Virus record (IMG/VR): IMGVR_UViG_3300041411_000178
Coordinates: 62,001-126,000 of that record
Strand: one strand, 5' to 3'
Length of the DNA: 64,000 bases
Numbering within the stretch: the first letter of the stretch is position 1; each line of letters starts with the position of its first letter. This document shows positions 2,263-60,520 of this stretch, one piece after another. The position numbers and the translations under genes were made by a program. The notes under the pieces are model-generated. The model was not told the origin of the DNA, made no database searches, and saw nothing but the letters and a program-made list of their open reading frames with translations.

Positions 2263-2321
2263 GCTTAACCCTATGGCTGCTAATTGTTTTTTTTTAAGTA
2301 ATTTCTCTATAGGCAAAAAGA

Positions 2322-2338
2322 TTTAAAACCTACATTAT
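2322..2338 (+). promoter_or_regulatory. Putative phage promoter motif TTTAAAACCTACATTAT
   Basis: Near-identical copies at 7346-7361 and 52697-52713, each in an AT-rich gap upstream of non-virion genes. Resembles phiKZ early (TATATTAC) and middle (AAanntTAC) elements. Confidence 0.55.
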
Positions 2339-2375
2339 TCCCTGGTAGACGACATTACTGTTTGGAGTTAGTAAC

Positions 2376-3935
2376 ATGCTTGAGCTTGCGATACGCCGAA
2401 CCTCCAGCAAGAAGTTCGAAGGGATTCTGATTACGTTCAACGATCAGATTATTAAGTTCAACGGCGAAGCGGCCATTAAACTGGAACGCACGATCAAGGA
2501 TCGCAGCGAAGCCACCTACAACCTGTTCGATTGCTTCAATGATTACATTGAAGGCACCATGGACCACGATCAGCAGAAGTATCTGTTCGATCTGTACAAC
2601 AAAGCTTACACCATTGTTGAGAGCGGTAAGTTCCAGGATTACAACGACGACCTGGCCCAAATCAAACCCATCACTGATGAGATCCTCGACTTCATCAACG
2701 TGCCGAAGTACTGCTCGTTCATCCATTACTCCAAGTACATGAAGATCCCCAAAGATCTGAGTGAAGCAGCGAGCAAGGGTGACTATCCAGAACAAACCAC
2801 CATCCGTGACCACGACTACGTCGAGCAGGTTAAGTTGGCGTTTGTGGCACGGACTATCTATCCAATCGTCTTCGGTCTGCAAGCACGATTCGAAGTGTTC
2901 ATGGGCAGTGGTGGTTTCAGCGATCTGGCCTGCGGTAACCTGATCAAGGATAACCCGTGGATCACACAACTGCCGGGTTGGCACAAACTGACCGGTTACG
3001 TCAAGTTCGCGTTTGACAAGCGTGGTATTCCTACCCAGCCTGACAGTGTCACCAGTGTTGAGAACTTTGTTGATAAAGTACTTTTTAACACGGTGTTCAA
3101 TCGTCTATGCTGTGCGGCTATTCCGGAAACGGAAGAAGGCAAGAACATTGCCACTGCTATTAACGCCTCGGTTAAGCAGCACGAGTCGTTGGGTGGTAAC
3201 TTCACGCAACGGGATTATCCAAGCGAGTCGGATGACGACAAGCGCTCGATGCTGGACAAGCACCAGATCAGTGAGGAAGTGCGCTCGACAGATGACACCG
3301 TATCGGCTGAGTTCTTCAGCTTTACGTTGTTTGACGAAGAAGACAATCCTCGTTACAAAGATCGCTTCAAGTACACCTGTGCGGCATTGGGTGTGCAGAA
3401 CGTTGAGCTGGTCGAGAAGATCTACGACAACCTGTCGCCACACTGGGACTTCGAGTTGGAAGATCACATCCTCAAGCTCCTGCAACTGACGTTTGCTTTT
3501 GAGGTGTCTCCATTTACCTTTGAAGCAGCCGGCTATGATCAACTGATGGCAGCGATCTGCATTGCGCAGGTACGACTGCATGAGCAAGGTTACAAGTACT
3601 TGCCGTCGGTGATTGGTGCGATCAAGGATCCGAATGGTGAACTGTCGCTACCAGATGGATTCAACCTGAGCGAAGAAGATCGTCAGTTCATGTCGTCCAT
3701 CTGTGAGATTCAAAACCGTAACAACGAAGGCCGCTCGTTTAACGAAGCAGTCGTCGCCGCCCAATCGTTCCTTGATAAGTTCGGTCGTGGCGTCTGGCAG
3801 TCCAATTTGGAATATGGGGTATTGGATACGCCAGAGACTTATGCATTGGTGGGTCAGGGCAAACTCTTTGCTCTGGAAATCAGCATTGAAGTCAAGAACG
3901 AATTCATGGCGTTGAACCGTAAAGTAAACGCCTAA
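2376..3935 (+). CDS. Non-virion RNA polymerase promoter-specificity subunit (phiKZ gp68-like)
   Basis: 519 aa. Size and position two genes upstream of the nvRNAP beta/beta' pair match phiKZ gp68. Confidence 0.7.
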   Translation: MLELAIRRTSSKKFEGILITFNDQIIKFNGEAAIKLERTIKDRSEATYNLFDCFNDYIEGTMDHDQQKYLFDLYNKAYTIVESGKFQDYNDDLAQIKPITDEILDFINVPKYCSFIHYSKYMKIPKDLSEAASKGDYPEQTTIRDHDYVEQVKLAFVARTIYPIVFGLQARFEVFMGSGGFSDLACGNLIKDNPWITQLPGWHKLTGYVKFAFDKRGIPTQPDSVTSVENFVDKVLFNTVFNRLCCAAIPETEEGKNIATAINASVKQHESLGGNFTQRDYPSESDDDKRSMLDKHQISEEVRSTDDTVSAEFFSFTLFDEEDNPRYKDRFKYTCAALGVQNVELVEKIYDNLSPHWDFELEDHILKLLQLTFAFEVSPFTFEAAGYDQLMAAICIAQVRLHEQGYKYLPSVIGAIKDPNGELSLPDGFNLSEEDRQFMSSICEIQNRNNEGRSFNEAVVAAQSFLDKFGRGVWQSNLEYGVLDTPETYALVGQGKLFALEISIEVKNEFMALNRKVNA

Positions 3936-3966
3936 GCAACTGAACTATCTTCGAGGTTAAAGCAAC

Positions 3967-5403
3967 ATGGCAGAAATTACGCTGATCAAAGCAATCTTCG
4001 GTATGGGTAACATGAACCATACCCACGTCCATCGGCACAACATCCTGGACATGTCGACGATGAACATCGACACCATCAAGATGGAGCAGCATCAAGGTGG
4101 TGTAACCCCTAACACACTGAATGCCATTGCTGCTCAGTCGGGCGGTCTGACCACGCGTCCATCCGGTGCGGTCAACATCGAAGATGACTGGAACATCCGT
4201 CGCGGTCTGGGGATGTTTACTTTCCTCATTACCAGCAACTCGGTTGAACAAGCCGAACTCGCAGTACTGGGTTACATGACCGGCGGTCAAGCCAGCCATG
4301 AAGGTATCGAACCTCAGACCATGTTCGTGCCGGTGCGTTGCTGGGATACCCGCACTACGCAGAAGTTCGACAACATGGGTCTGCCAATGGCGTCGACTGT
4401 TATTGCGTCGTCTCACCAGTTCCTGATGGGTGACCCAACCGGCCGTGACGAACTGAAGTCGGTACGTCCGCTGGACATGGCGCAAGAAGTGCTGGGCTAC
4501 ATGGCCAGTTCTGCGGATGGCATGCAAGATGGCTTTGACGGCATCCTGGCGGCTGACCTGCGTCAGAACGTAGTCATGTCCAAGACTGACAACCTCAACC
4601 CAACACACCACGCTCGTGAGCTGTTGAAGATTGCGGCAGCCACTACCACCGAAGGCCAGTACACCGGTATCGCAAATGCCATCGGTGATGCAATGGTCGG
4701 TCCTGGTATTGGTGAAGCACCTCTGACCAGCAACGAGTTCTTCAAAACCATGATGGCGGCAGGTGGTAGCTTCTCCATGAGCAACTTCATGGGCTGGAGC
4801 ATGGCGGAGATCAACTCGGTCTTCACCAACCTGCCAGACGTGATGAACATCACGCTGCTTAACCCAAGCGCCACGGTAGCTGTTGACAACACGCTGATCT
4901 CTCACGAGCACGGCGGTGCCAACAGCTTTGAAACCATCGCGGCTGAGCTGGCTTACCTGACGGTTCACATGCTGATCCGTTGCGGCCTGACTCACCTGGT
5001 GTTCTCTGCAACCAACAACCCACATCACTTCAGCGGTCTGGAAGGTTCGGACTCGGGTGTGGAAGTGGTGACTGGTACGTTCGGTTCGGTACTCGACCAC
5101 GACGAACACGCGATCAATCGGGTAGAACGCTTCAAGGAAATGCTGCGGGGCTTGTTCTTCAGCAAGTACTCGACGCAGTTCGTTCACACCTCGACGATCA
5201 TCAGCGTTCAGGTCAGCTGCCACCTGTTCGGTGAAACCGACGTGACGGTGTTCTTCAACGGGGAGGAAGGTCTCCAACGGAAGTACACCAATGCTACGTA
5301 CGCGGTTAACCGGACCAGTACCAACATCACCAACAGCCAAGACGGTCTGAATGAGGCTCAAAACTTCATGACGAACATCACCGAATACTTCACAAAGAAC
5401 TAA
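3967..5403 (+). CDS. picA: PicA/Imp1-like phage-nucleus protein import factor (phiKZ gp69 position)
   Basis: 478 aa, directly after the gp68-like gene as in the Chimalliviridae core block. Synteny-based. Confidence 0.6.
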   Translation: MAEITLIKAIFGMGNMNHTHVHRHNILDMSTMNIDTIKMEQHQGGVTPNTLNAIAAQSGGLTTRPSGAVNIEDDWNIRRGLGMFTFLITSNSVEQAELAVLGYMTGGQASHEGIEPQTMFVPVRCWDTRTTQKFDNMGLPMASTVIASSHQFLMGDPTGRDELKSVRPLDMAQEVLGYMASSADGMQDGFDGILAADLRQNVVMSKTDNLNPTHHARELLKIAAATTTEGQYTGIANAIGDAMVGPGIGEAPLTSNEFFKTMMAAGGSFSMSNFMGWSMAEINSVFTNLPDVMNITLLNPSATVAVDNTLISHEHGGANSFETIAAELAYLTVHMLIRCGLTHLVFSATNNPHHFSGLEGSDSGVEVVTGTFGSVLDHDEHAINRVERFKEMLRGLFFSKYSTQFVHTSTIISVQVSCHLFGETDVTVFFNGEEGLQRKYTNATYAVNRTSTNITNSQDGLNEAQNFMTNITEYFTKN

Positions 5404-5412
5404 GGACCTGCC

Positions 5413-6885
5413 ATGAATGAATTGAACAAGTTGTACAAAGCCATGTTGATGTCATGGGGTTCCGTAATCAAAGATGACGCCCGTATTGTGGTGTCCATCA
5501 ATGGTGACGAGATTCCGGTCCGCATCGACGACATGGACATGCACCTGCCGCTGTCCGAAGTCCTCGACGGCAATTGCATCGACAAGGTGTTCTTCCATCC
5601 GGCCTGCGAAAACGTGACCTCCAAGGAAACTGAAGTGTTCAAGGTGATTCGTCGCCTGTCCACCCTCAAGCTCCTGACCACGTTCACCGAGTACGTGCCG
5701 ATCATGTTCGGCGTGGCGAGCAAGACCACCAAGCAAGCCTGGCGTCAGAACATCCTCGACATGCTCGAGCCTCTGAAGTCGGCCAAGCGTACCTTCCGTG
5801 ATGAGCTGAAGAAACTGTTCAGCCAGATGCAAGTGGAAGTCAACGACAACGGCGTCGACAACCGTTTCCTGCACATCAAGGTCACCAAGGGTGGTGGTCG
5901 TGGCAAGAGCGGTGAGAAGGTCTACTACAAAGCCAAGCCGGTGTTCCCGTTCTACAACGAGATCATCAAGCGTCTGGCTCGCTCCGAAGGTCAGTCTGAC
6001 AACCAGACGGTTGAACTGAACGGCTTCAGCGTATCGATCGGCGCACTGAAGTTGGCGGCTCACCTGTTCCAGCAGATCCTGCCAATCGTGGAATCGCCGG
6101 ACGATCTGGAAATCGAATCGACCAGTCAAGTCGGCGCGCGTCTGTGTGCATACCTGGGTTGCTACTACGAGTTGGCTGAACAGCTGAACCGTATCCAGAA
6201 CACCTTCCGTGCAGACTTCGACAAGGCCGGTGTCTACCCAATCGACACCAACTGGTACGAACACCTGGAAGAGCTGCCGGAAATCTACCGTCAGGTGCCT
6301 ACGCTGGATTACAACAGCCACAACACCCAGGACGAAGAAGTCCAGCAGACCACCAACCAGCGCAACAACACCAACCTGTTCTCGGTCAGCGGCAATCGCA
6401 ACCAGAACAATAACAACAACCAAAACAACAACAGCAATAACAACAACAATAACGGCGGTAATAACAATAACCGTGCGAATGTTGTTGGCGGTAATGACGG
6501 TAGCTTCGACACCACCGTTCCAGCAATGGAATATGGCGACAACTACGTCAAGACCGAAATCGATTACATGAACGGCCACGTGATGCACTACGCCGTGAAC
6601 AACAATGGCAACCAGGTCATCTACCAGTGCACCCGCCACGGTAACCTGCTGCGTCGTATCGAAAGCAGCATGATGAACAACATGGGCGCCATGAACATGA
6701 TGGGCATGGGCGGTATGGGTGGCATGGGCGGTAACATGATGGGTGGTCAGCAATTGGCCAACGGCATGATCCTGCTGCCTAACGGTATGACCGTAATGCC
6801 GCAACAACTGCAACAAATGATGCGCCCAAGCACAAGCCAAGGCGCACCGGCTGGCACGTCGGACTATTCGGTTTCGACTTTCTAA
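5413..6885 (+). CDS. Conserved protein (phiKZ gp70 position) with N/Q- and G/M-rich low-complexity C-terminal half
   Basis: 490 aa, GGA upstream of the ATG. Globular N-terminal region, then poly-Asn and GMGG repeats. Confidence 0.7.
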   Translation: MNELNKLYKAMLMSWGSVIKDDARIVVSINGDEIPVRIDDMDMHLPLSEVLDGNCIDKVFFHPACENVTSKETEVFKVIRRLSTLKLLTTFTEYVPIMFGVASKTTKQAWRQNILDMLEPLKSAKRTFRDELKKLFSQMQVEVNDNGVDNRFLHIKVTKGGGRGKSGEKVYYKAKPVFPFYNEIIKRLARSEGQSDNQTVELNGFSVSIGALKLAAHLFQQILPIVESPDDLEIESTSQVGARLCAYLGCYYELAEQLNRIQNTFRADFDKAGVYPIDTNWYEHLEELPEIYRQVPTLDYNSHNTQDEEVQQTTNQRNNTNLFSVSGNRNQNNNNNQNNNSNNNNNNGGNNNNRANVVGGNDGSFDTTVPAMEYGDNYVKTEIDYMNGHVMHYAVNNNGNQVIYQCTRHGNLLRRIESSMMNNMGAMNMMGMGGMGGMGGNMMGGQQLANGMILLPNGMTVMPQQLQQMMRPSTSQGAPAGTSDYSVSTF

Positions 6886-6898
6886 GCAGCCATAAGGC

Positions 6899-6928
6899 TA
6901 GCAGGCTGGGGAATTCCCCAGCCTGCTA
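6899..6928. terminator. Bidirectional terminator (perfect 30-bp palindrome) between convergent genes
   Basis: TAGCAGGCTGGGGAATTCCCCAGCCTGCTA, with a T-rich tract on the right and GCAGCCATAA (6886-6895) on the left. Confidence 0.8.
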
Positions 6929-6940: not shown

Positions 6941-7270
6941 TTAGGCTTTAACGGTATTACTGCGGGATATGGCTTTGTTCAAATCGCTCTCGTTGATCAT
7001 CTGAAACGAATGCATCTCAGACACATCCTGGTTGGGATCAGAGATGTCGTTGATAAATGCAGTGGCCCAACGCAAGTGAGCCGGGATGTTCATGACACGC
7101 ATCACCCGATAGAAGTCGTTACGGAATGCGTAGAGCATCGCTCGGTCCACAATGGGCATCAACTGAGAACCGCGCAGCAGGATTTCTTTTTCAGAACGAA
7201 CCAAAGTCTTGAAGGCTTCGGTGTAGTAAATGTCTTTACCGTTATCCGATTCGTTGTTTGGAATTGGCAT
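6941..7270 (-). CDS. Small protein, possibly T4 gp53/LysM-like baseplate component
   Basis: Start placed at MPIPNN because GGAGAGGA lies upstream. The segment LRWATAFINDISDP resembles the W-x4-5-N-x-I-x-DP pattern of gp53-like proteins. Confidence 0.5.
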   Translation of the reverse strand: MPIPNNESDNGKDIYYTEAFKTLVRSEKEILLRGSQLMPIVDRAMLYAFRNDFYRVMRVMNIPAHLRWATAFINDISDPNQDVSEMHSFQMINESDLNKAISRSNTVKA

Positions 7271-7345
7271 TGTCCTCTCCAAGCTAATTGTTAACTGGCG
7301 GCCCTATCCTTTATTGCTATAAGCGATATGGCAACCCTAATAAAA

Positions 7346-15383: not shown

Positions 15384-15388
15384 TACTG

Positions 15389-15430
15389 TATAACCCTACC
15401 CATCCCCGCGAAGGGATGGGTAGGGTTATA
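15389..15430. terminator. Bidirectional terminator between convergent genes
   Basis: 18-bp perfect stem TATAACCCTACCCATCCC/GGGATGGGTAGGGTTATA, loop CGCGAA. Confidence 0.85.
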
Positions 15431-15448
15431 TAACAGCTTTATTTTTTG

Positions 15449-20723: not shown

Positions 20724-20736
20724 GTACTGCTAGCCT

Positions 20737-20758: not shown

Positions 20759-20770
20759 GGGTTAAGCCGT

Positions 20771-21461: not shown

Positions 21462-21508
21462 CCCACCGCCGTCATTCACACCACCCCCTCCTCGCAAGGA
21501 CTGAACAA

Positions 21509-22618: not shown

Positions 22619-22660
22619 TATAAGCCCTCCTACTCCTTTGCGGGAGTAGGAGGGCTTATA
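22619..22660. terminator. Bidirectional terminator between convergent genes
   Basis: 18-bp perfect stem with loop TTTGCG, overlapping TTATAGCTGC (22656-22665). Confidence 0.85.
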
Positions 22661-22666
22661 GCTGCT

Positions 22667-28710: not shown

Positions 28711-28726
28711 GTTGTACCGGCTATAA

Positions 28727-28760
28727 CCTACCCTACCTCCTTTGCGGGAGGTAGGGTAGG
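28727..28760. terminator. Bidirectional terminator between convergent genes
   Basis: Stem CCTACCCTACCTCC/GGAGGTAGGGTAGG, loop TTTGCG, followed by TTATGGCTGC (28762-28771). Confidence 0.85.
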
Positions 28761-28772
28761 ATTATGGCTGCT

Positions 28773-38951: not shown

Positions 38952-38987
38952 GGGTGCTGTAGCAGTTGCCGTAATACCGTAAGGTAG

Positions 38988-39017
38988 CTACTAAGGGCGA
39001 GCAATCGCCCTTAGTAG
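38988..39017 (+). terminator. Hairpin terminator
   Basis: 13-bp stem with GCAA loop, followed by TTATGGCCGC (39020-39029) and T-runs. Confidence 0.8.
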
Positions 39018-39093
39018 TCTTATGGCCGCATTTTGTTTTTTCAAGGGATGCTATAGGTTTTGCTACATATCCTTTTTAACAGGTACTTTAACC

Positions 39094-47777: not shown

Positions 47778-47926
47778 ATCTTCAGCCGCTTCCCTATGCC
47801 TATGTTCGAAAGGACTAACTCTTGGGAGACCAGGGGGGAGGGTGAGGGGAGTTGGCTGATATTAACTAGCCCCTTAGCGTAGCTAAGGGTTTCCTTGTTC
47901 TGCTGTACAAAGGGGAATAGGCAATA

Positions 47927-48070: not shown

Positions 48071-48088
48071 ACGGTTATAGCGGCTATA

Positions 48089-48128
48089 TTAATACCCTAA
48101 CCGCTCCTAGGAGCGGTTAGGGTATTAA
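48089..48128. terminator. Perfect 40-bp palindrome, bidirectional terminator
   Basis: TTAATACCCTAACCGCTCCT/AGGAGCGGTTAGGGTATTAA, between the small ORF and the 3' end of dnaB. Confidence 0.8.
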
Positions 48129-48144
48129 GCTCCATTCTAGTTCT

Positions 48145-49692
48145 TTATGCTGCTACACCGAAGTGATCGAAATCGTTCTCTAGATCGCCATTCTCATTTA
48201 GACGCTGTGTCAAACTGCGACGGAAAGCTGCTTTCTTGCCAATGTCGTGTTCCAAGCCTTTCTCAGGATGCAAATCGTAGATCCCAAAGCGTTCTTCTGG
48301 CAAACATCCTTCGCCCCGTTGTTTACCTACGCAGAACGTGAAGTAAACCTTGAAGGTTGTTTTGGCCACATGGATGGTGATGACCACATCCACTTCGTTG
48401 GTGATTTTCGTCGAGGTTTCAGTAAGCGACTTACCGGACACTTCTCGAGCAAAGTACACCTCAGACTCTTCGTCCGATTCCTGTAGCTTCATCTTGGCTG
48501 CTGGAGACAATTGATGAGGCGTCAAGAAGCAGATACCGCGAGCAATAATGAAACCCCTGATCTTCCGGAAGTGCATTTGCAGCTTGTCGGACTTTGTTTC
48601 GCCAGGGATCTTGTCGATGTTTTGCAGACCGCAGTAGTCGTAGGCCCAGAAGATGATCTCGTGACCTTTGAGTTCCAGTTGACGGCAACGAGCAAACATG
48701 GTATTCGCCGAGTCTTTACTGGAATCAATTTGGTTGATGATGAGATACCAACCATTTTCTTTAAAGCAGCTAACGATGGCATCAACGATGTCCATGTTCT
48801 CAGCAGTCTGGAAGTCAGAGGTAATCCCGTGACGTGCAGAGAGCGCCAGCTTGTACATGCGCATGATGATCAGATCCATGGTGTCTTCAGCAGACTCCAG
48901 GAGGATCGTAGGGATCTTGGCCTTGTCACGCAGCATAGGCTTGTTGTAGAGACCGATACTGGCAACCATGTGACTCGTAGCGAGAGACTTACCCCGGTTA
49001 GTCAACGCTTCGATCATGTACATCTTGCCACGGCGGAAACCACCATCAGGATTCAAGGCAATGTTCAAGCCCTGGATACCTGACTTCATGATGCCTTCAA
49101 GACTGTTCTCGCGCTTAGCCATGTCGATGATGGCATTAAACGAGTCAGGAGCTTCAGACGTCACCTGAGCAACGATTTCAGATTGACGTTCTTCCATGCC
49201 CTGGTTGACACCGGCTTGGACCAAATCGATCAGGTTAGCCCAATCGTCTTTGCCCATGTCATTGATGTCTTTGAAGTAGAAGTCCTTAATTGCCTTCTTG
49301 AACTTCTTGGCAAACTCTTCACCTTCCGAGTTAAGCCGGATCTCAGAAATGTGCTGGTAGATAACTTTACGAGTCATCTCATCACTGGCTTGATCTTCCA
49401 GACCATGCTGGATTGCTTCTTTCAAGCTCTCATCATTCTTGACGAACATGCTCACACGTTGCATCAAAGATGATTTTATGACCAGTACATCTTCTTCGGG
49501 CTGTTCCAACAGCCAGCGGATAGTTGCGCGAATGCTATCCCGGATCCCTTTGTCCTGAGTAAAGACGTCGGAGTTGGGGACGGGCAGTTCGTTTAACGTA
49601 TCTACCAGTTCCGTGATTAGGTTAGTGTCTTTCAGCTTCTTAGCCTGATACAACGCAGACAACAACTTAACCAGTACCAATAAATCGTTCAT
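48145..49692 (-). CDS. dnaB: DnaB-like replicative helicase (phiKZ gp118-like)
   Basis: Walker A ALTNRGKS, H1a LESAED, H2 WAYDY, H3 LTPHQL, H4 EVDVV and KQRG arginine finger. Confidence 0.88.
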   Translation of the reverse strand: MNDLLVLVKLLSALYQAKKLKDTNLITELVDTLNELPVPNSDVFTQDKGIRDSIRATIRWLLEQPEEDVLVIKSSLMQRVSMFVKNDESLKEAIQHGLEDQASDEMTRKVIYQHISEIRLNSEGEEFAKKFKKAIKDFYFKDINDMGKDDWANLIDLVQAGVNQGMEERQSEIVAQVTSEAPDSFNAIIDMAKRENSLEGIMKSGIQGLNIALNPDGGFRRGKMYMIEALTNRGKSLATSHMVASIGLYNKPMLRDKAKIPTILLESAEDTMDLIIMRMYKLALSARHGITSDFQTAENMDIVDAIVSCFKENGWYLIINQIDSSKDSANTMFARCRQLELKGHEIIFWAYDYCGLQNIDKIPGETKSDKLQMHFRKIRGFIIARGICFLTPHQLSPAAKMKLQESDEESEVYFAREVSGKSLTETSTKITNEVDVVITIHVAKTTFKVYFTFCVGKQRGEGCLPEERFGIYDLHPEKGLEHDIGKKAAFRRSLTQRLNENGDLENDFDHFGVAA

Positions 49693-49715
49693 TAGGAAAC
49701 CCCTAGGAGCTGAAA

Positions 49716-50264
49716 ATGATTCTTAAGACCCCTCAAGGGAAGTCAGTCCGTATTTTTTATCTGACCAGCGAGATGCAACGTTTGCTGGCCAGTCAAGCAA
49801 TTCCGTTCAGCGATCTTTCTAAGCTGTCAACATATCATCAGAAGTTGACGTTCGGTGAAATCGCAAACATTCTCAAGTTCCAATACCTCGTTGCTCAAGA
49901 GCTGGGTGTTCTGCTCATCGACCCGAAACATCTGTTCGGTGAAGGGTACAACGCGGGCATGGTCGAGGCTGCATTTAATAGCCTGGACGGTGAAAGCTTA
50001 TCCGCAATTGTTAAGGACACCAAGTCCTTCAGTTGCATCGACGCGGGCATGAACACCATTATCTTTCTATTTAATGGGGAGAACGCTCCAAAGGCTCCTG
50101 GCTTCGACACGCTAGAGTGTGTCACTTTCTCTGGCGCTTTGCTGGAAACAATTTTTGCTAAGGTGGGATACATGGAATCCCACAACGGTAAAATCCCAAA
50201 ACCTAACCAGGGTGAATTTACCTTGGCAGAGGTTTACAAACTGGTTAGTATACAAAACCCGTAA
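49716..50264 (+). CDS. Conserved protein upstream of the major capsid gene (gp119 position)
   Basis: 182 aa, AGGAG upstream. Confidence 0.65.
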   Translation: MILKTPQGKSVRIFYLTSEMQRLLASQAIPFSDLSKLSTYHQKLTFGEIANILKFQYLVAQELGVLLIDPKHLFGEGYNAGMVEAAFNSLDGESLSAIVKDTKSFSCIDAGMNTIIFLFNGENAPKAPGFDTLECVTFSGALLETIFAKVGYMESHNGKIPKPNQGEFTLAEVYKLVSIQNP

Positions 50265-50273
50265 CTTCACTGT

Positions 50274-50281
50274 ATTTTATG
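50274..50281 (+). promoter_or_regulatory. Putative late promoter ATTTTATG for the capsid gene
   Basis: TATG core 60 nt upstream of the capsid start. Confidence 0.55.
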
Positions 50282-50340
50282 TGTAGCGCTAATACACAGA
50301 CAAATATATTTGTTCACATCCTCAGTAAAGGATTCGAGTC

Positions 50341-52533
50341 ATGGCCTTTAAACAAGTCACCGCGTCTCTGAAGAATACCGGAAACCTCTTCAGCGCCGTT
50401 CGTACCGCCCTGGGCAACAACCAACTCAACACCGTGATCGGGGCTGAAAGCTTCGATACCTTCGCTGACGGCGTGAAAAGCATTGCCGGCGTTGAAAGTC
50501 ACCAGCTGACCACGCTGTTCAACAACGTCACTCCAAAGCAGTTCGACGCGTTCGCTGGCTCCCTGAACCGCTCCGGCGTTCCTGGCACCGAAATGGCGAT
50601 CATGGGCGAAGCAGCCAAGGCTCTGGCCGAAGTCACTGGTATCGAGGGTTTCTCGCTCCAGAACTTCAAAGGCAGCGAGATGGACATCAAGGCAGCCAAC
50701 CTGACCTTGAACGCCCAGTCGCACCTGCAAACTCCTGGCGCTGAAGCGCTGTTCTCCACCATCACCGTTCGTTACGAAGACGAAGGCGCCAACCTGGTAG
50801 TCCGCGCTGCGGGTATCGGTTCGTACGCCTACGGCAACTCGGCATGGCAGTCGGCTTCCGAACTGCGTCCGATCTTCGGCCTGCTGCGTACCGGCGACAT
50901 GTTCAAGGACGAAGTCCTGGCCGTACATCCGGTATACCCGGAAAACGCCAACGACGACAACCGCGACTTCTTCGTTGATACCGCGATCGTTCCAGCCGGC
51001 ACTGCTACCTACCCGGAAGCAGACGCCTACAACCGTAGCTCCCACGCTACTCAGTTCCTGAAAGTTCCGAACACCATTCCGAACTACCTGGCACTGACCC
51101 AGGTTCCTGGCCAGCGTCCATGGACCAGCACCGATGAACTCGAGTCCAACTCGCTGGTCATCAAAGAAGTTCTCGCTTCCGCTAAACTGGGCGCGACCAA
51201 CATCAACTTCTTCATCAACACCGTTGCGATCTCGAACAACACCTTCGGCCCTACCAGCCAAGGCCAGTCGTCCGACGACCGTGAAGTAAACCTGCACCTG
51301 CGCGCTCTGCCAGGCTTCTCGGTTCTGGACAAAGATGGCGCACCGGTCGGCGAGACCCTGTTCGCTGCTTTCAAAACCGCCGGTTACGAGCCTCTGCTGA
51401 ACATCAGCATGAACGGCAACTACCAGCGCCAGAGCAACGAGCTGCGTCTGAACTCCGGTCAAGTGACCGTGCACGGCCTGCGTGACCTGACCAACGGCAA
51501 CGTTGTCACCATGCACAAAGCCGACGCTACCCAAAAGGGCCTGATCAAGTCCCTGACTGCTGGCGCCGTTACCGGTGTCGACATGGGCGGCAACGTGTCC
51601 AACACCTCCCGCGGTAACTTCGGCTACCGTATCGAAGTGTTCGATGCTGACAAGCGTCTGAGCGTACGTCGCAACAGCCCGGTCTCGGTCAAGTACCCAG
51701 TATCGGCTGACGACGTGAACCAAGCGTCCCTGGACTTCGCGATTCAGCAAATGTCCATCGCCATCAACAACCAGTGCTCGAAGAAAGCGTTCGATGTGGC
51801 TCAGGAACACCTGAAGTACATCACCTCGATCGACGGCTCTCCAGTTGTTGGTAACCAACAGGGCTCCAACGTCCTGCCAGGTCAGCACTACGTTTCGGCT
51901 GCGGCCGTTAACCGTTCGTTCAAGATCAAGGACCGTGTATCGTCCCTGGACTCGGCTGACGTGTTCGACAACGTTGCTGCTGTGTTCCTGAACGAGCTCA
52001 GCGACATCACTGCTGCCCTGAACACCAAGTCGGGTCTGGCTGCGATCGCTGAATACGGCGGCACCGACAAGATCGAATGGACCGTCGTGGTTCACCAGAA
52101 CTTGGCGCGCTTCCTGATGCGCTCGGGCGACGCTCGCTCCCTGGGTCCAGTGACCCCGATGACCATCGTTGAGACCAACTTCGACAGCCAAATCGGCCAA
52201 CTGCTGATCGTTCCGAAGAACACGTCCACCAACGACTTCATCAACCCGCTGGGCGGCATCGGCGTGAACATCTCGAAAGAGAACATCGTCGTACAGGGTA
52301 ACGTGACTCGTGACCAGCAGGACTTCGGTGTGGTCATGACCATGCCTACCTACCGTCACTGGCCGCTGAACGTCATCATCGGCTCGCTGATCATCGAAGA
52401 TGCTCACGAGTTCCTGGGTGACGATGGCCTGCTGACCAAGCTGGCGAAGCAGATCGTTCAGGTTGAAGGTCTGAACGAAGGTATCGCTGCGCTGGTTACC
52501 GCGACTGAAGGTAACGCACCTGTAAACCCGTAA
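50341..52533 (+). CDS. Major capsid protein precursor (phiKZ gp120-like)
   Basis: 730 aa with extreme codon bias and N-terminal GxE processing sites. The DnaB-gp119-MCP-gp122-RNAP beta synteny fits. Confidence 0.88.
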   Translation: MAFKQVTASLKNTGNLFSAVRTALGNNQLNTVIGAESFDTFADGVKSIAGVESHQLTTLFNNVTPKQFDAFAGSLNRSGVPGTEMAIMGEAAKALAEVTGIEGFSLQNFKGSEMDIKAANLTLNAQSHLQTPGAEALFSTITVRYEDEGANLVVRAAGIGSYAYGNSAWQSASELRPIFGLLRTGDMFKDEVLAVHPVYPENANDDNRDFFVDTAIVPAGTATYPEADAYNRSSHATQFLKVPNTIPNYLALTQVPGQRPWTSTDELESNSLVIKEVLASAKLGATNINFFINTVAISNNTFGPTSQGQSSDDREVNLHLRALPGFSVLDKDGAPVGETLFAAFKTAGYEPLLNISMNGNYQRQSNELRLNSGQVTVHGLRDLTNGNVVTMHKADATQKGLIKSLTAGAVTGVDMGGNVSNTSRGNFGYRIEVFDADKRLSVRRNSPVSVKYPVSADDVNQASLDFAIQQMSIAINNQCSKKAFDVAQEHLKYITSIDGSPVVGNQQGSNVLPGQHYVSAAAVNRSFKIKDRVSSLDSADVFDNVAAVFLNELSDITAALNTKSGLAAIAEYGGTDKIEWTVVVHQNLARFLMRSGDARSLGPVTPMTIVETNFDSQIGQLLIVPKNTSTNDFINPLGGIGVNISKENIVVQGNVTRDQQDFGVVMTMPTYRHWPLNVIIGSLIIEDAHEFLGDDGLLTKLAKQIVQVEGLNEGIAALVTATEGNAPVNP

Positions 52534-52629
52534 TAAGGGTTGCGGCAGCTTACTACGGGGTTCTTGATCCTGAGTAAGCTCCGTGGTGTCGTAGTGCTGC
52601 GGTAACCCCTTCACAGGGATACAAACCTA

Positions 52630-52665
52630 AACCCCCTCTCCTGGCTTCGGTTGGGAGAGGGGGTT
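52630..52665 (+). terminator. Capsid-gene terminator
   Basis: Stem AACCCCCTCTCC/GGAGAGGGGGTT with C(TTCG)G apex, then TTATGGCTGC (52664-52673) and T-runs. Confidence 0.8.
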
Positions 52666-52696
52666 ATGGCTGCATTTTCATTATTTGTTGTAATTT

Positions 52697-52713
52697 TTTA
52701 AACCTACATTATT
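52697..52713 (+). promoter_or_regulatory. Putative phage promoter motif TTTAAACCTACATTATT
   Basis: Shares AAACCTACATTATT with the 2322 element. Confidence 0.55.
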
Positions 52714-52769
52714 AGAGCAGACTACGTATTACAGATTGGCTTTTAAGGAAGTCGGCAGAGGTTCTAATC

Positions 52770-53906
52770 ATGACTACTGAATTGAATTGCTTCCAACTTA
52801 ACTACCGAATTACCAATATCTCCAGCAAAGAGATTATTGTGAAGATCAAAGGTGGGTTGAGTTACATTGTGCAACGTGGTAGTGAAGCCACGTATATCAA
52901 TGAACAACAAATCCACGTAGTCATCGAGAATGTCTTCTTGGACAATCTCATGATTGACGTGAACGCTGCTCTGACTAAACTGGACAAAGCCGTTTTGGTA
53001 GAGTTGAGTAAAGAACACGAACGTCTGAAGAAGACCAACAACGAATACCATCTTCGTATGCCGGTCAGTCTGCGTGTTTCGTTGGACCTGCACAAAGGCT
53101 TGGTGGAACGCAACAATGCGATCCATAGCGAGCTGATGGGCATTACCATGTACGTGGGTAGCGAGAACCTGAATCAACCCTGTCTCAATACCCCCGCGTT
53201 CACCATGCAGGAGCTCTTCGAGAATCCTGGTGACGAATCCATGCAGAGTAAAGGAGGACTGCACTACTTTGTTTATGTAAACGACCCACAACGGGTTAAT
53301 AAGCCACTCTATACGAACATCATGGGTGAATCGACTGAGGTACCGGTTGACTATGATGCTAACAAACAACCCGGATTGTATGTTGGTATTTCCCGCGGTA
53401 TTGAACCACGGGGGACCCAATATTACGCCTTCGGTGAATTGAATGACCAGAAACTAACACAGCTGGGATTATTCAAGACAAAAGCCGAGTGTGATTTAGG
53501 AGGCAATACAGAACGATTCTTGACGGCAGAGAGCAAGAATCGAGACCTTATTAAAGACGCCAACAGCATGCGTACCCAGATCCAAAACCTGACAGAGGCG
53601 TTGGGGAAATCTGAAACCAACGTTTTTCGCCTGAACACTGAGTTGATTAAAGTGAAAGACGAGCATAAGCTCGAGATAAATGCTATCAAGATGGAGCACC
53701 GCATGGAGGCTAACACCTTGAAGCATAGCGGCAAAATGGCATCGGACTTGTTCAAGTTCGAGAGCCGCATCAAGGATACAGTGAATAAGGCGAACACTGA
53801 GCTTGTAAAGCAAAAGGGCGCGCAGAATTCCTGGGGGGACTTTGCGAAAGCCGTAGGCACCTTGGCAGGTGTGGCAATCACGGGGTATAAGCTGCTAACA
53901 GCATAA
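52770..53906 (+). CDS. Conserved protein with C-terminal coiled coil (gp122 position)
   Basis: 378 aa. Heptad-rich last 120 aa and a hydrophobic C-terminus. Confidence 0.65.
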   Translation: MTTELNCFQLNYRITNISSKEIIVKIKGGLSYIVQRGSEATYINEQQIHVVIENVFLDNLMIDVNAALTKLDKAVLVELSKEHERLKKTNNEYHLRMPVSLRVSLDLHKGLVERNNAIHSELMGITMYVGSENLNQPCLNTPAFTMQELFENPGDESMQSKGGLHYFVYVNDPQRVNKPLYTNIMGESTEVPVDYDANKQPGLYVGISRGIEPRGTQYYAFGELNDQKLTQLGLFKTKAECDLGGNTERFLTAESKNRDLIKDANSMRTQIQNLTEALGKSETNVFRLNTELIKVKDEHKLEINAIKMEHRMEANTLKHSGKMASDLFKFESRIKDTVNKANTELVKQKGAQNSWGDFAKAVGTLAGVAITGYKLLTA

Positions 53907-53916: not shown

Positions 53917-55578
53917 ATGTCAGGTAAACTAGCCAGAGCCATTGATAACTCAATGCCACGGTTCAACTCAACGATCACAGAGGGGTTTCATCAGAACGAG
54001 TTCGAAGGTGCCGTACACTATTACGAGAATGCTCTACGGATGATCTTTAAGAGCATCGAAAAGCGTGGCGTCTTCTTTAAAGGTGTGGATGAGGTCGACC
54101 CTGATGAATATATCAATCACCTGATTCAAAGCAGTACGAAGTTGTTCGATATCCACAAGGAAACACTCTACCCGGTTAAGCTGAAGTTTGAATACCGTAA
54201 TCGGGCGGGTGACATCATCGAGATGCAGCAGTACACCATGTTGGCGTACACTGACGTTTACGGCGACCTGTGGTTGCGTGGTACGCAATACAGCTTGCAG
54301 ATCGTGCTGGCTGAACGCGGTCTACCGGTCACTAAAGAGAATGCCTTGTTTGTTAAGGTGTTGGGCTTTAAGTTCAAGATCGGTACCGAACACTTCAAGT
54401 TCTCCCAGGTTTTCACCGACACGGGTAACTTGACGTACAAGACCACCGAGCTGAACCTGGCGGCTAACCGCTTCTACAGCCCGACTGAGTCTCGCAAGAT
54501 CAACGACACCAAAACCCCAATGCCATTGCTGGCGTGGTACACGTTTGCGGACATGGGGTTCAGTAAGGCGATTGACATCTTTGGGGAATGCGACTATGAG
54601 ATCGCACCTATTGAAGTACTGATCGCTGAGTGTCGTCCGGAAGACCGCTGGGAGATCTTTACCCGCGCCAGCCGTTCTGGGAATGCCAAGTACCTGGGGG
54701 AGTTTGTTCCTCACGACTACGGCATTGCAATACGTAACAAATCGAGCAAGCGTAAAGAACTCAGCGCAATGGGCTTGCAGTATGCCAGTGCGCTGTTGTT
54801 CGTAGTTGACTGCCTTTCGTCGTACTTCGATATTGACAACATCGATAACCCGGATTATTGGAAGTTGATCATTGGTCGTTGCTCGGTTAAGTCCGGTGAC
54901 AGCAATGATTACATCATGCGCTTGATGAATGAGCACTTTGATTCCATTAACGAGTACCTCGACGAAGATTCGATCAAGAAGTTTGCCAGCCAGTCGATCG
55001 TAGTAAGCAACATGTTCGAGTTGTTTAACTACATCATTGCTAACCGCAGTGAGATTGTGCAAACCACGGATCGCGCAGACATGTTCCACAAGGAACTGGC
55101 GAGTTTGGAGTTTACGTTGGACAAGCTGATTACAGCCGCCAACAAGTTCAAGCACGAGATCAAAAACAACTCCGAGCTTAACCAGAAAAAGGTTGCTCGT
55201 TTCCTGACCAACAACTTTCACATTAAGGAGATTGACAATTCACGTACAACCAATCTCATTCAGGAAGCGACACCAACCGATTGCCCGTATGTGGACTATG
55301 TGTTGGGTTGTATGCCTCAGCATCGTGTTTATACGAATTCGACCAAAGCGAAGAAGCGCGGTGAGTTTGATCCCACCGACAGTGCAGGCAGCGCGCATGC
55401 GAGCATTGCATTTGTAAACAGCTTCCTCCGGGTAACTGGACCCTATCCGGACGGTCGAGGCTATCTCAATCCATGTGTATATCTCATTCAAGGCAAAACA
55501 ACAGCGTTGGATCCATCGCTGAAGTGGCTGTTCGAGAAGACGGATAAACGCCTACGCTACCGCGAGCCCTTTGCTTAA
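53917..55578 (+). CDS. rpoB: Non-virion RNA polymerase beta subunit, N-terminal part (phiKZ gp123-like)
   Basis: 553 aa. YTDVYGDLWLRGTQYSLQIVL matches the beta G.F.inG.E.v region. Size and synteny fit. Confidence 0.75.
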   Translation: MSGKLARAIDNSMPRFNSTITEGFHQNEFEGAVHYYENALRMIFKSIEKRGVFFKGVDEVDPDEYINHLIQSSTKLFDIHKETLYPVKLKFEYRNRAGDIIEMQQYTMLAYTDVYGDLWLRGTQYSLQIVLAERGLPVTKENALFVKVLGFKFKIGTEHFKFSQVFTDTGNLTYKTTELNLAANRFYSPTESRKINDTKTPMPLLAWYTFADMGFSKAIDIFGECDYEIAPIEVLIAECRPEDRWEIFTRASRSGNAKYLGEFVPHDYGIAIRNKSSKRKELSAMGLQYASALLFVVDCLSSYFDIDNIDNPDYWKLIIGRCSVKSGDSNDYIMRLMNEHFDSINEYLDEDSIKKFASQSIVVSNMFELFNYIIANRSEIVQTTDRADMFHKELASLEFTLDKLITAANKFKHEIKNNSELNQKKVARFLTNNFHIKEIDNSRTTNLIQEATPTDCPYVDYVLGCMPQHRVYTNSTKAKKRGEFDPTDSAGSAHASIAFVNSFLRVTGPYPDGRGYLNPCVYLIQGKTTALDPSLKWLFEKTDKRLRYREPFA

Positions 55579-57944: not shown

Positions 57945-57974
57945 GTAACCTACCGGGGCTACCCGGTAGGTTAC
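57945..57974 (+). terminator. Hairpin terminator
   Basis: 13-bp stem GTAACCTACCGGG/CCCGGTAGGTTAC with T-runs downstream. Confidence 0.8.
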
Positions 57975-58021
57975 GGTCTATTACGCATTTTGTTTTTTTA
58001 AGATACAGCCGGTTTCACGTC

Positions 58022-58029
58022 TATATTAC
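58022..58029 (+). promoter_or_regulatory. Early promoter-like TATATTAC
   Basis: Exact match to the phiKZ early promoter consensus, upstream of a cluster of small genes. Confidence 0.6.
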
Positions 58030-59739: not shown

Positions 59740-59744
59740 GATAA

Positions 59745-59766
59745 CTGTGCCGGGTGACCGGCACAG
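59745..59766 (+). terminator. Hairpin terminator
   Basis: CTGTGCCGG/CCGGCACAG followed by a T-rich tract. Confidence 0.65.
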
Positions 59767-59835
59767 CAAGTCTTCTTTATTTTTTGCATTAACATCCTTT
59801 GTAGAAACCCATCCGTAACCAAAGAGAGAGAACCG

Positions 59836-60471
59836 ATGTCTAATACTTATCCGCATCTCAACAATGGTGACGTGGCCAACCTGCTGGCTAACCATCGTCT
59901 CGTGCAAGTGAACCCGGTCGAGCAGCGTTACGCTAACGATCCGTTCCCGACTGGCGATGGCCTGATCGCAGAGATCAAAGAGCGTCTGAACTCGGCCCCT
60001 GGTGATCTGGGTGGCCTGCCATCCGAAAACGAGCCGGTTGTTCAGCGTATGACGCCTGAAGCCGCTCTGAACAACGTCACCTCGATCTCCGACCTGGACA
60101 CCCTGACCGATCACTACTCGGCTCTGCTCATCGAAGCAGCCCCACTGGTGGAAGGCAACGAACTCGCTGATGCCATCGGTGACCTGAAGTCCCGCGTGCT
60201 GACCGTGGTATCTGAAGGTCTCGAACCAGTGCGTATCGAAACTCCGGCCAAAGGCCAGAGCGATGCTGAACTGGTAACCCTGTATAACGGCATCAAAAGC
60301 CTCGAAGACCTCGAAGCTGCACTGAGCGCCGAACACGGTGAAGAAGTTCTGCTGGCTATCGTTGGCATGACTGACCGCATCCGTGCTTCCGTCATCGCCG
60401 CACTGCCCCCTGCTGAGAAAGTAGCAGAAGAACCTGCACCTGAGCAAGAACAAGCTTCTGACCAAGCGTAA
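59836..60471 (+). CDS. Acidic hypothetical protein sharing an N-terminal domain with 59152..59739
   Basis: 211 aa with strong codon bias. Confidence 0.75.
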   Translation: MSNTYPHLNNGDVANLLANHRLVQVNPVEQRYANDPFPTGDGLIAEIKERLNSAPGDLGGLPSENEPVVQRMTPEAALNNVTSISDLDTLTDHYSALLIEAAPLVEGNELADAIGDLKSRVLTVVSEGLEPVRIETPAKGQSDAELVTLYNGIKSLEDLEAALSAEHGEEVLLAIVGMTDRIRASVIAALPPAEKVAEEPAPEQEQASDQA

Positions 60472-60482
60472 GCAGCCATAAG

Positions 60483-60520
60483 GCTAACCCTCCTACCCCG
60501 CAAAGGGTAGGAGGGTTAGC
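60483..60520. terminator. Bidirectional terminator between convergent genes
   Basis: 16-bp stem with loop CGCAAA; GCAGCCATAA at 60472-60481. Confidence 0.85.

What the first reader, a model, noticed from the sequence alone, without database searches (positions are those of the whole stretch)
2272..60520. Recurring hairpin + TTATGGCTGC element at transcript ends: phage-specific terminator or antisense late promoter
A conserved decamer sits right next to strong hairpins. On + it reads TATGGCTGC 2272, TTATAGCTGC 22656, TTATGGCTGC 28762, TTATGGCCGC 39020 and TTATGGCTGC 52664. On - it reads TTATGGCTGC at 6886-6895 and 60472-60481, and TATAGCCGC at 48080-48088. In each case it lies 3' of the hairpin on the strand of a gene that ends there (ChmC-like, head proteins, MCP, portal, gp53-like, DnaB), where a U-tract would normally be. 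At convergent junctions it abuts the opposite gene's stop codon. Hypothesis A: a sequence-specific termination or 3'-processing signal for the phage RNAP. Hypothesis B: its TATG core is a late promoter, which at convergent junctions would fire antisense into the opposite gene.
Basis: partly seen in the sequence, partly recalled or inferred. Interest (0 to 1): 0.65.

Follow-up and report, generated by a model that had tools for sequence, protein, structure and literature searches.

The report
Jumbo-phage hairpin-plus-TTAT transcription terminators
The recurring hairpin followed by TTATGGCTGC is this uncultured jumbo phage's version of a transcription stop signal already mapped by experiment in its relatives phiKZ and 201phi2-1, so it is real and tidy but largely ordinary.

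Summary
In the 224-kb genome, 12 of 25 near-matches to TTATGGCTGC sit directly at the 3' end of a strong hairpin (0.11 expected), as do 7 of 8 exact copies.

It is a terminator, not a promoter:
- The core motif is at 12 of 17 convergent gene junctions, 0 of 17 divergent junctions and 6 of 156 tandem junctions.
- It never follows an intragenic hairpin or an antisense-oriented one.
- In 26 related phage contigs the site after the major capsid gene always has a hairpin with a different stem. Its G:U pairs work only in the sense RNA.
- There the decamer slot is interchangeable with TATGTTGC, TTATGTTTGC, TTTATTACGC or a plain TTTTTTTTGC.

Published long-read RNA mapping found the same design in phiKZ (61 terminators: C-rich/G-rich stem-loop, then TTAT) and in 201phi2-1. 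My scan of 50 kb of phiKZ shows hairpin + TTATGYYGT.

Hypothesis A (a phage-type terminator with a short UUAU segment in place of a U-tract) is supported. Hypothesis B (an antisense late promoter) is not.

The one open oddity is that the motif contains TATG, the late-promoter core of the non-virion RNA polymerase. No transcript ends were mapped for this phage.

The parts
2238..2280 (+). Weaker terminator after gene 1516-2220: hairpin 2238-2262, 8-nt spacer, CTATGGCTGC 2271-2280, then a T-run.
   Evidence: fold -16 to -19 kcal/mol. Tandem junction. The promoter-like AAACCTACATTAT follows at 2326.
6886..6928 (-). Bidirectional terminator at a convergent junction. Hairpin 6899-6928, with TTATGGCTGC 6886-6895 on the - strand after gene 6941-7282. 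On the + strand the same hairpin is followed by TACCTTTCTTTTTT.
   Evidence: The motif abuts the stop codon of + gene 5413-6885 with no gap.
22619..22665 (+). Bidirectional terminator: perfect 18-bp hairpin 22619-22660 whose base is TATAA/TTATA, with TTATAGCTGC at 22656-22665.
   Evidence: Lies between gene 21509-22582 (+) and the DNA polymerase gene 22667-24553 (-). Not flagged by the T-run terminator scan.
28717..28771 (.). Bidirectional terminator with the motif on both sides. Hairpin 28727-28760, TTATGGCTGC 28762-28771 on +, and TTATAGCCGG on - (reverse complement of 28717-28726).
   Evidence: Convergent junction of 27952-28710 (+) and 28773-31709 (-).
38987..39029 (+). Terminator after the internal head protein gene. 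Hairpin 38987-39018, TTATGGCCGC 39020-39029, then ATTTTGTTTTTT.
   Evidence: The ATG inside the motif is not the start of the next gene. The homologous start is at 39094.
48080..48128 (-). Terminator of the DnaB-like helicase gene 48145-49692 (-). Hairpin 48089-48128 and TATAGCCGC 48080-48088 on the - strand.
   Evidence: The motif keeps this orientation in relatives, in the variants TATAGCCGC, ATATGGCTGC, TTATGTTTGC and TTTATTTTGC.
52630..52673 (+). Terminator of the major capsid protein gene 50341-52533. Hairpin 52630-52665 with G:U pairs, and TTATGGCTGC 52664-52673.
   Evidence: Metatranscriptome contigs of relatives end at 52477 and 52613, and depth drops 5-10 fold across it.
60472..60529 (.). 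Bidirectional terminator. On the - strand, hairpin 60483-60520 then TTATGGCTGC 60472-60481, after the virion structural gene 60545-63649. On the + strand, an extended hairpin 60474-60529 then TTTCTTTTTTGC, after gene 59836-60471.
   Evidence: The decamer plus TTA is kept in relatives down to 62% MCP identity while the stems change.
57945..57986 (+). Sister variant of the same terminator family: hairpin 57945-57974 followed by CTATTACGC (57978-57986) and ATTTTGTTTTTTT.
   Evidence: The same TATTACGC variant follows hairpins elsewhere in the genome and after the RisingSun MCP gene.
15387..15432 (.). Convergent-junction hairpin with a TATAA/TTATA base, followed on + by ACAGCTTTATTTTTTGC. This is the U-rich variant of the family.

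Best explanation
The element is a factor-independent transcription terminator. It is the version used by this EL/RisingSun-like nucleus-forming jumbo phage of the conserved terminator already mapped in phiKZ and 201phi2-1.

Proposed mechanism:
- The RNA of the gene that ends just upstream folds into a long G+C-rich hairpin, with a pyrimidine-rich 5' arm and a purine-rich 3' arm.
- The next bases, UUAU, give a short weak RNA:DNA hybrid in the slot where bacterial terminators carry a U-tract.
- The following G/U-rich bases ending in GC (GGCUGC here, KYYGU in phiKZ) are a lineage-specific distal part. They are presumably tuned to the phage's own multisubunit RNA polymerases.
- At convergent gene pairs the stem is a perfect palindrome, so one hairpin stops both transcripts. 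A TTAT-type tail, or a U-run, is usually present on both sides, packed right up to the opposite stop codon.

Shown here: the anatomy, the enrichment, the orientation, the junction bias, the sense-strand RNA pairing and the conservation.
Shown elsewhere, by experiment: transcript 3' ends map to the homologous motif in phiKZ and 201phi2-1.
Inferred: that 3' ends form here, and the roles of UUAU and GC.
For: 1. Tight coupling to hairpins. 12 of 25 near-matches and 7 of 8 exact copies lie at a hairpin's 3' end, P = 2e-22.
2. Junction bias. The core motif is at 12 of 17 convergent, 0 of 17 divergent and 6 of 156 tandem junctions, Fisher P = 2e-5. It follows 0 of 92 intragenic hairpins and 0 of 11 antisense-oriented tandem hairpins.
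3. The orthologous site after the MCP gene in 26 IMG/VR relatives. A hairpin is always present but its stem sequence differs. The tail varies from TTATGGCTGC through TATGTTGC, TTATGTTTGC and TTTATTACGC to TTTTTTTTGC. In 19 of 19 non-redundant copies the sense fold is 3-18 kcal/mol more stable than the antisense fold, through 1-6 G:U pairs.
4. The motif orientation after DnaB is conserved across relatives. The decamer at the 60472 site is kept down to 62% MCP identity while the stems turn over.
5. Published mapping. In phiKZ, 61 mapped terminators share BCCYCCCCHWWDGGGRRGGBYTTATKYYGT (PMC10914365). In 201phi2-1, motif A (n=59) resembles it, and 8 terminators of that phage, chosen for varied motifs, work in a terminator trap (PMC11512511).
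6. My own scans find TTAT enriched after hairpins in phiKZ, EL, RisingSun and this genome.
7. The phage encodes a homologue of the phiKZ non-virion RNA polymerase subunit gp123, next to the MCP gene.
8. Metatranscriptome contigs of relatives cover the MCP gene and stop before or at the hairpin, with a 5-10 fold drop in depth.
Against: - No 3'-end mapping exists for this phage. The only RNA data are assembled contigs of 90-95% relatives, which cannot show true ends or strand.
- The decamer is more uniform within this genome than a mere weak-hybrid segment requires. It is also more conserved at the 60472 site than the stems are. The role of GGCTGC is therefore unexplained.
- The motif contains TATG, the core of the phiKZ late promoter. 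A second, promoter-related role is not excluded.
- The gene calls used for the junction statistics come from my own codon model, not from a curated annotation.
Confidence: 0.8

Rival explanations
1. Hypothesis B of the first reader. The TATG inside the motif is a late promoter for the non-virion RNA polymerase. It would drive the next gene at tandem junctions and fire antisense into the opposite gene at convergent junctions.
For: - The phiKZ late promoter is TATG with G as +1 (PMC4666361, PMC12809450).
- The likely MCP late promoter here is tATTTTATGtg at 50273-50281, conserved in all relatives, so TTATG is shared with the motif.
- The phage has the gp123 homologue that reads TATG in phiKZ.
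Against: - The motif is absent from all 17 divergent junctions, where operons start, and present at 12 of 17 convergent junctions.
- Three of the eight window sites, and about a third of the genome's decamer-type copies, read TATA rather than TATG. Every single substitution in TATG nearly abolished phiKZ transcription.
- Relatives replace the motif with a plain T-run at the same site.
- At tandem sites 2271 and 52664 a separate conserved promoter-like motif, AAACCTACATTAT, lies between the element and the next gene. EL annotates that motif as a promoter.
- Candidate late promoters have a T-rich stretch before TATG, not a G+C stem.
Confidence: 0.06
2. Dual reading. [quoted passage not shown] This would give a sequence-specific pause just after the hairpin that replaces the U-tract pause. 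Alternatively it would allow immediate re-initiation.
For: - In a 50-kb phiKZ sample, 19 of 66 oriented hairpins are followed by TATG against 3.3 expected. The usual form is TTATGYYGT.
- In phiKZ, gp123 binds the non-template TATG (PMC12809450).
- At the 60472 site the decamer is more conserved than the stems.
- No held paper links TTATG with phiKZ terminators.
Against: - In this genome the fifth base is G, A or T, at 11, 17 and 12 of 43.
- Relatives manage with plain U-runs at the same site while keeping the TATG late promoter upstream of the MCP gene.
- Several 201phi2-1 terminators work in uninfected cells, where no phage polymerase is present.
- The sequence downstream of TATG in P119L and in the MCP promoter here does not resemble the terminator tail.
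Confidence: 0.08
3. RNA processing and stability element. Transcription reads through, and an endonuclease cuts in the single-stranded ...GC/AUUUUG tail, which resembles the RN|WUU preference of RNase E (recalled from memory, not tested). The hairpin then protects the new 3' end.
For: - In tandem contexts the motif is typically followed by ATTTTG and a T-run.
- Hairpins at 3' ends stabilise RNA in general (established knowledge).
Against: - At convergent junctions the ATTTTG part is missing, yet the motif is commonest there.
- The homologous phiKZ and 201phi2-1 elements behave as terminators in read-through measurements and in a terminator trap.
- Processing alone would not prevent polymerase collisions at convergent genes.
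Confidence: 0.05
4. A dispersed repeat (REP-like or miniature mobile element) with no role in transcription.
For: Several stems share CCCTCCTACCC-like arms and TTTGCG/CGCAAA loops.
Against: - The positions are orthologous across relatives, while the stem sequences differ and stay paired.
- The placement is strict, 8-37 nt after stop codons at most sites, and the element never lies inside a gene.
- There are no target duplications or flanking repeats.
Confidence: 0.01

Closest known systems
Conserved phiKZ terminator motif (Putzeys et al. 2024, PMC10914365) and 201phi2-1 terminator motif A (PMC11512511)
   Same: - A G+C-rich stem-loop with a C-rich 5' arm and a G-rich 3' arm.
- TTAT directly after the stem, then a short G/pyrimidine tail.
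- Placement after gene ends, and bidirectional use between convergent genes.
- A host phage family with its own virion and non-virion multisubunit RNA polymerases.
- My scan of phiKZ 100-150 kb shows TTATGTCGT, TTATGTTGT and TTATGCTGT after hairpins.
   Different: - The stems here are longer: 13-18 bp against about 7-10 bp.
- The tail is GGCTGC (general form NNNN-GC) rather than KYYGT.
- The fifth base is G/A/T here but mostly G in phiKZ.
- No 3'-end mapping exists for this phage.
Canonical bacterial intrinsic (Rho-independent) terminator
   Same: A G+C-rich RNA hairpin followed by a weak A/U hybrid. It is bidirectional when an A-rich stretch mirrors the U-rich one; here that is TATAA...TTATA. 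In relatives the same site carries a plain U-run.
   Different: Only 3 of the first 4 tail bases are U, and the distal tail is G/C-containing. The standard T-run scan misses these sites.
phiKZ-type late promoter of the non-virion RNA polymerase (TATG, G = +1)
   Same: It shares the four bases TATG in 5 of the 8 window sites.
   Different: - The position is wrong: gene ends, not operon starts.
- The upstream context is a G+C stem, not T-rich.
- TATA and TATT variants occur.
- The motif can be replaced by U-runs.
Phage N4 hairpin promoters for its virion RNA polymerase
   Same: An inverted repeat lies directly next to a possible start site.
   Different: - N4 hairpins are 5-7 bp DNA structures at the starts of early genes.
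- Here the stems are 13-18 bp, lie at gene ends, and tolerate G:U pairs that are valid only in RNA.

Membership tests
Chimalliviridae conserved terminator (phiKZ motif / 201phi2-1 motif A) | G+C-rich stem-loop with a pyrimidine-rich 5' arm and a purine-rich 3' arm | tested here: met
   Stems such as CCCTCCTACTCC/GGAGTAGGAGGG and CCCCCTCTCC/GGGAGAGGGGG.
Chimalliviridae conserved terminator (phiKZ motif / 201phi2-1 motif A) | 5'-TTAT-3' directly 3' of the stem | tested here: met
   TTAT lies within -5..+5 of the stem end in 26 of 91 strong oriented hairpins against 2.2 expected, P = 7e-21. The same enrichment is seen in phiKZ, EL and RisingSun.
Chimalliviridae conserved terminator (phiKZ motif / 201phi2-1 motif A) | Tail KYYGT after TTAT | tested here: inconclusive
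   The tail here is G-G-C-T-G-C (general form NNNN-GC). One genome copy reads TTATGCTGT, which matches exactly. The tails are related but not identical.
Chimalliviridae conserved terminator (phiKZ motif / 201phi2-1 motif A) | Lies after gene ends in sense orientation, and is bidirectional between convergent genes | tested here: met
   12 of 17 convergent, 0 of 17 divergent, 0 of 92 intragenic. Distance from the upstream stop codon is 8-37 nt at most elements.
Chimalliviridae conserved terminator (phiKZ motif / 201phi2-1 motif A) | Transcript 3' ends accumulate at the element | not testable with these tools
   Only assembled metatranscriptome contigs of relatives are available. The MCP contigs stop at 52477 and 52613, and depth falls across the hairpin. 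This is suggestive only.
Chimalliviridae conserved terminator (phiKZ motif / 201phi2-1 motif A) | The phage carries phiKZ-type multisubunit RNA polymerase genes | tested here: met
   Window 53917-55578 matches PHROG 2943 'polymerase' at E = 7e-156, and phiKZ gp123 at E = 8e-16. It is syntenic, next to the MCP gene.
Canonical intrinsic terminator | At least 5 T in the 8 bases after the stem | tested here: not met
   The hairpins at 22619, 28727 and 38988 are not among the 22 T-run hits in 20-40 kb. That hit count is itself no more than chance, 18.3 expected.
phiKZ-type late promoter | Intact TATG with G at +1 | tested here: inconclusive
   Met at 5 of the 8 window sites. 22656 and 48080 read TATA, and the partner on the - side of the 28727 hairpin also reads TATA.
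phiKZ-type late promoter | Located upstream of genes or operons that need a start | tested here: not met
   0 of 17 divergent junctions. At tandem sites 2271 and 52664 another conserved promoter-like motif precedes the next gene.
phiKZ-type late promoter | Primary 5' ends at the G | not testable with these tools
   No raw RNA reads of an infection are available.

The most novel reading that the evidence does not exclude
The terminator tail of nucleus-forming jumbo phages deliberately contains the late-promoter core TATG. The elongating non-virion RNA polymerase would re-read it in the non-template strand with its promoter pocket, as in sigma-dependent pausing. That would give a polymerase-specific pause that replaces the U-tract, or would couple termination to immediate re-initiation. 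If so, promoter recognition and termination in this polymerase family would be linked. It could also explain why the decamer is conserved more strictly than the stems.
Probability: 0.08. Interest if true: 0.65.

Novelty: new member of a known kind. Interest (0 to 1): 0.3.

Why it matters
- It gives a usable rule for annotating transcription units in EL/RisingSun-like jumbo phages, most of which are known only from metagenomes. The rule is a long hairpin followed by TTAT-NNNN-GC. It marks gene ends and is nearly universal at convergent gene pairs.
- It extends the hairpin + TTAT terminator design mapped in phiKZ and 201phi2-1 to a distant branch of the family. This argues that the design is ancestral to these phages and suited to their unusual RNA polymerases.
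- It points to an overlap between the terminator tail and the TATG late-promoter core. That overlap appears undiscussed in the papers I could search and could be tested cheaply in phiKZ.

Tried and rejected
- RNA evidence. The one run search found only metagenomes and three metatranscriptomes that hold 9-12% of the sampled words. Laying four runs on 47400-53300 gave assembled contigs of 85-99% relatives with no strand or end information. This supports expression of the MCP gene and a drop after it, nothing finer.
- Rfam at gathering thresholds found no family anywhere in the window.
- The canonical sigma-70 promoter and T-run terminator scan of 20-40 kb was uninformative for these sites. Terminator-like hits were at chance level, and sigma-70-like sites were depleted, 3 against 13 expected.
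- Supplementary tables with the phiKZ and 201phi2-1 start-site and terminator coordinates are not held. Ceyssens et al. 2014 is not held. I could therefore not check where 3' ends fall relative to TTATG, nor whether any start site sits on a hairpin-adjacent TATG.
- The ATG in the motif as a start codon: rejected. ORFs 28764-31007 and 39022-40152 begin there only as shadow or extended frames, and the true start of the second gene is at 39094.
- A match of the tail to the E. coli elemental pause consensus was considered from memory. The register does not fit, so it was dropped.
- A link between the terminator tail and the sequence downstream of TATG in P119L or in the MCP promoter here: none seen.
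- My first hairpin scan with RNAfold windows timed out. I replaced it with a stem-extension scan.
- The large protein searches were not used, and none was needed.

Full report
**What the window is.**
- The window is bases 62001-126000 of a single 224,004-bp contig with 51.5% G+C.
- Its major capsid protein (MCP; window 50341-52533) is 63% identical to that of Erwinia phage RisingSun and 57% identical to that of Pseudomonas phage EL. Gene order matches both.
- DNA-level matches to named phages are negligible.
- IMG/VR holds 26 related contigs with 58-99% MCP identity.
- Runs that hold the sequence are soil, rhizosphere, plant and wastewater metagenomes.
- The gene next to the MCP gene (53917-55578) is a homologue of phiKZ gp123, the beta-like subunit of the non-virion RNA polymerase.
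- So this is an uncultured EL/RisingSun-like member of the nucleus-forming jumbo phages.

- Seven follow a 13-18 bp hairpin (perfect at the convergent junctions) of -24 to -34 kcal/mol, within a few bases of the stem end or overlapping it. The site at 2271 follows a weaker hairpin after an 8-nt spacer.
- In the window there are 10 hits with at most one mismatch against 2.76 expected, and no shuffle reaches 10. The three hits without a hairpin are intragenic and fit the chance expectation.
- Genome-wide, 12 of 25 such hits lie at the 3' end of an oriented hairpin, against 0.11 expected (P = 2e-22).
- Seven of eight exact copies do so. The eighth is an ordinary gene start, ATGGCTGCT behind a ribosome-binding site.

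**Terminator or promoter?** I called genes with a self-trained codon model: 208 genes, 173 of them on the + strand. I then classified every junction.
- The core T?TAT[GA]G[CT][CT]G[CG] occurs at 12 of 17 convergent junctions, 0 of 17 divergent junctions, 6 of 156 tandem ++ junctions and 1 of 17 tandem -- junctions. Fisher's test for convergent against divergent gives P = 2e-5.
- Promoters belong at divergent junctions and terminators at convergent ones.
- None of 92 intragenic hairpins carries the core. None of 11 hairpins read in the antisense direction at tandem junctions carries it.
- At convergent junctions the stems are perfect palindromes. The opposite direction usually has its own tail. 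Examples are TTATAGCCGG at 28717-28726, TATGTGGTTTTTCTTTTTTGC after 60520, TACCTTTCTTTTTT after 6928, and TTATATTTACGC or CTATTACGC elsewhere.
- Two antisense promoters facing each other would make little sense. Two terminator tails sharing one hairpin do.

**Comparative evidence at the MCP site.**
- Downstream of the MCP gene, every relative has a hairpin, but the stem sequences differ completely.
- The tail occupies the same slot with different letters: TTATGGCTGC, TATGTTGC, TTATGCTGC, TTATGTTTGC, TATTTTGC, TTTATTACGC (RisingSun), TTATAGCGC, or simply TTTTTTTTGC.
- So the decamer stands where a U-tract stands in close kin.
- In all 19 non-redundant copies the sense-strand fold is 3-18 kcal/mol more stable than the antisense fold, because of 1-6 G:U pairs. 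The hairpin therefore works as RNA of the capsid transcript.

**Comparative evidence at other sites.**
- After DnaB, a - strand gene, the motif stays on the DnaB sense strand in relatives across the 60-95% range, again with variants from TATAGCCGC to TTTATTTTGC.
- At the site orthologous to 60472, TTATGGCYGC or TTATGTCTGC followed by TTA is retained down to 62% MCP identity while the stems change. Some sequence-specific constraint on the tail therefore exists.
- A general alignment of 43 sense-oriented tails gives T-T-A-T, then G/A/T, G/T, C/T, T/C, G, C, then a T-rich stretch.

**What follows the element at tandem sites.**
- The usual continuation is ATTTTG and a T-run.
- At 2326 and 52700 there is then AAACCTACATTAT. 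This motif has 13 near-copies in the genome, most of them 24-190 nt upstream of genes. It is conserved in all relatives and is annotated as a putative phage promoter in EL.
- At those two sites the next gene therefore has its own start signal.
- The ATG inside the motif is not a start codon. The gene after 39020 begins at 39094.

**What is known.**
- Long-read mapping of primary transcripts in phiKZ found 133 termination sites. [quoted passage not shown] Six are bidirectional regions between convergent genes (PMC10914365).
- 201phi2-1 has the same motif (n=59). Eight of its terminators, chosen for varied motifs, were strong in a terminator trap in uninfected Pseudomonas chlororaphis (PMC11512511).
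- My scan of phiKZ 100-150 kb shows the tails directly: TTATGTCGT, TTATGTTGT, TTATGACGT, TTATGCTGT. This includes the hairpin after its MCP gene and both sides of the hairpin between genes 129 and 130.
- TTAT is enriched after hairpins in phiKZ, EL, RisingSun and this genome.
- The window element is thus a member of this known terminator family, with a lineage-specific distal tail and longer stems.

**The promoter idea in detail.**
- The phiKZ late promoter is TATG with G as +1, and every position is needed (PMC4666361). The non-template strand is read by gp123 (PMC12809450).
- A likely late promoter of this kind lies 60 nt upstream of the MCP start codon. It reads tATTTTATGtgtagc, at 50273-50287, and is conserved in all relatives. 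Similar aTTTTATG sites precede other genes.
- So TTATG is shared between late promoters and the terminator tail, and in phiKZ the tail is mostly TATG (19 observed against 3.3 expected).
- I found no held paper that mentions this overlap.
- Here, however, the fifth base is G, A or T (11, 17 and 12 of 43). Relatives use plain U-runs at the same site. The sequence after TATG in P119L or in the MCP promoter here does not resemble the tail.
- I therefore keep a promoter-pocket pause or re-initiation role only as a low-probability novel reading.

**RNA data.**
- Only assembled contigs were available. In three soil, peat and rhizosphere metatranscriptomes, contigs of 85-99% relatives cover the MCP gene.
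- One contig ends at 52613 directly followed by adapter sequence, and two end at 52477.
- Summed depth falls from 14-40 to 0-6 across the hairpin.
- This fits termination but cannot locate an end or a strand.

**Mechanism I commit to.** This is hairpin-driven intrinsic termination.
- The hairpin forms in the nascent RNA.
- UUAU supplies the weak upstream part of the hybrid.
- The distal G/U-rich bases ending in GC modulate efficiency for the phage polymerases by a means not yet known.
- At convergent pairs the palindrome serves both directions.
- Steps shown here: anatomy, enrichment, orientation, junction bias, RNA-level pairing and conservation.
- Step shown elsewhere by experiment: 3' ends at the homologous motif.
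- Steps inferred: 3' ends here, and the roles of UUAU and GC.

**Verdict.**
Hypothesis A is supported and hypothesis B is not.
- The element is a new member of a known kind, so interest is modest.

Noticed in passing
window 2326-2338 and 52700-52712 (7349 with 2 mismatches); genome-wide 13 near-copies: Promoter-like motif tttNAAACCTACATTAT, most copies 24-190 nt upstream of + strand genes. It is conserved downstream of the MCP terminator in all 26 relatives and is annotated 'putative phage promoter' in EL (L028 30602-30620, 43609-43627). Its temporal class is unknown.
   Followed up: partly
window 50273-50340: Likely late promoter and leader of the MCP gene. It reads tATTTTATG, with G at 50281, 60 nt before the ATG. 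Two small palindromes follow (GTGTAGCGCTAATACAC and ACAAATATATTTGT). All of this is conserved in relatives from 58 to 99% MCP identity.
   Followed up: partly
window 57995-58029; six more in the genome (e.g. genome 25833, 156936, 202787): A third promoter-like motif: TTTAAGATAC, about 13 nt, then cTATATTAC. There are 7 exact TATATTAC copies, all intergenic and all on the + strand. In four copies it is followed by a near-identical leader (tGTGATTAAGACAATTAAGTCTTTCA or a close variant). It looks like an AT-rich early-promoter class.
   Followed up: no
whole window, e.g. 28764-31007 (+) over 28773-31709 (-); 3904-5361 (-) over 3967-5403 (+): Very long antisense 'shadow' ORFs lie over most real genes. 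Two of them start at the ATG inside the terminator motif (28764, 39022). Codon scoring and homology place the real genes on the other strand or at a later start.
   Followed up: partly
window 20001-40000: Sigma-70-like promoter matches are depleted (3 against 13 expected from shuffles). This fits a phage that does not use the host polymerase.
   Followed up: no
window 47778-48079: A 302-nt stretch without a called gene lies between gene 46419-47777 and the DnaB terminator. RisingSun has gp79 plus an HNH endonuclease here, and EL has four small genes, so this is a variable insertion spot.
   Followed up: no
window 48200-53300: Relatives at 85-99% identity appear in soil, peat and rhizosphere metatranscriptome libraries, with the MCP gene best covered. 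This phage group is therefore probably active in such habitats. Carry-over of DNA into those libraries was not excluded.
   Followed up: partly
genome 27384, 59960, 120744, 121775, 156673, 187471, 220557 (window 58744, 59775): A second tail type follows hairpins: a spacer of 5-12 nt, then CTTTATTTTTTTGC. It shares TTAT...TGC with the decamer and may be the U-rich end of the same terminator family.
   Followed up: partly
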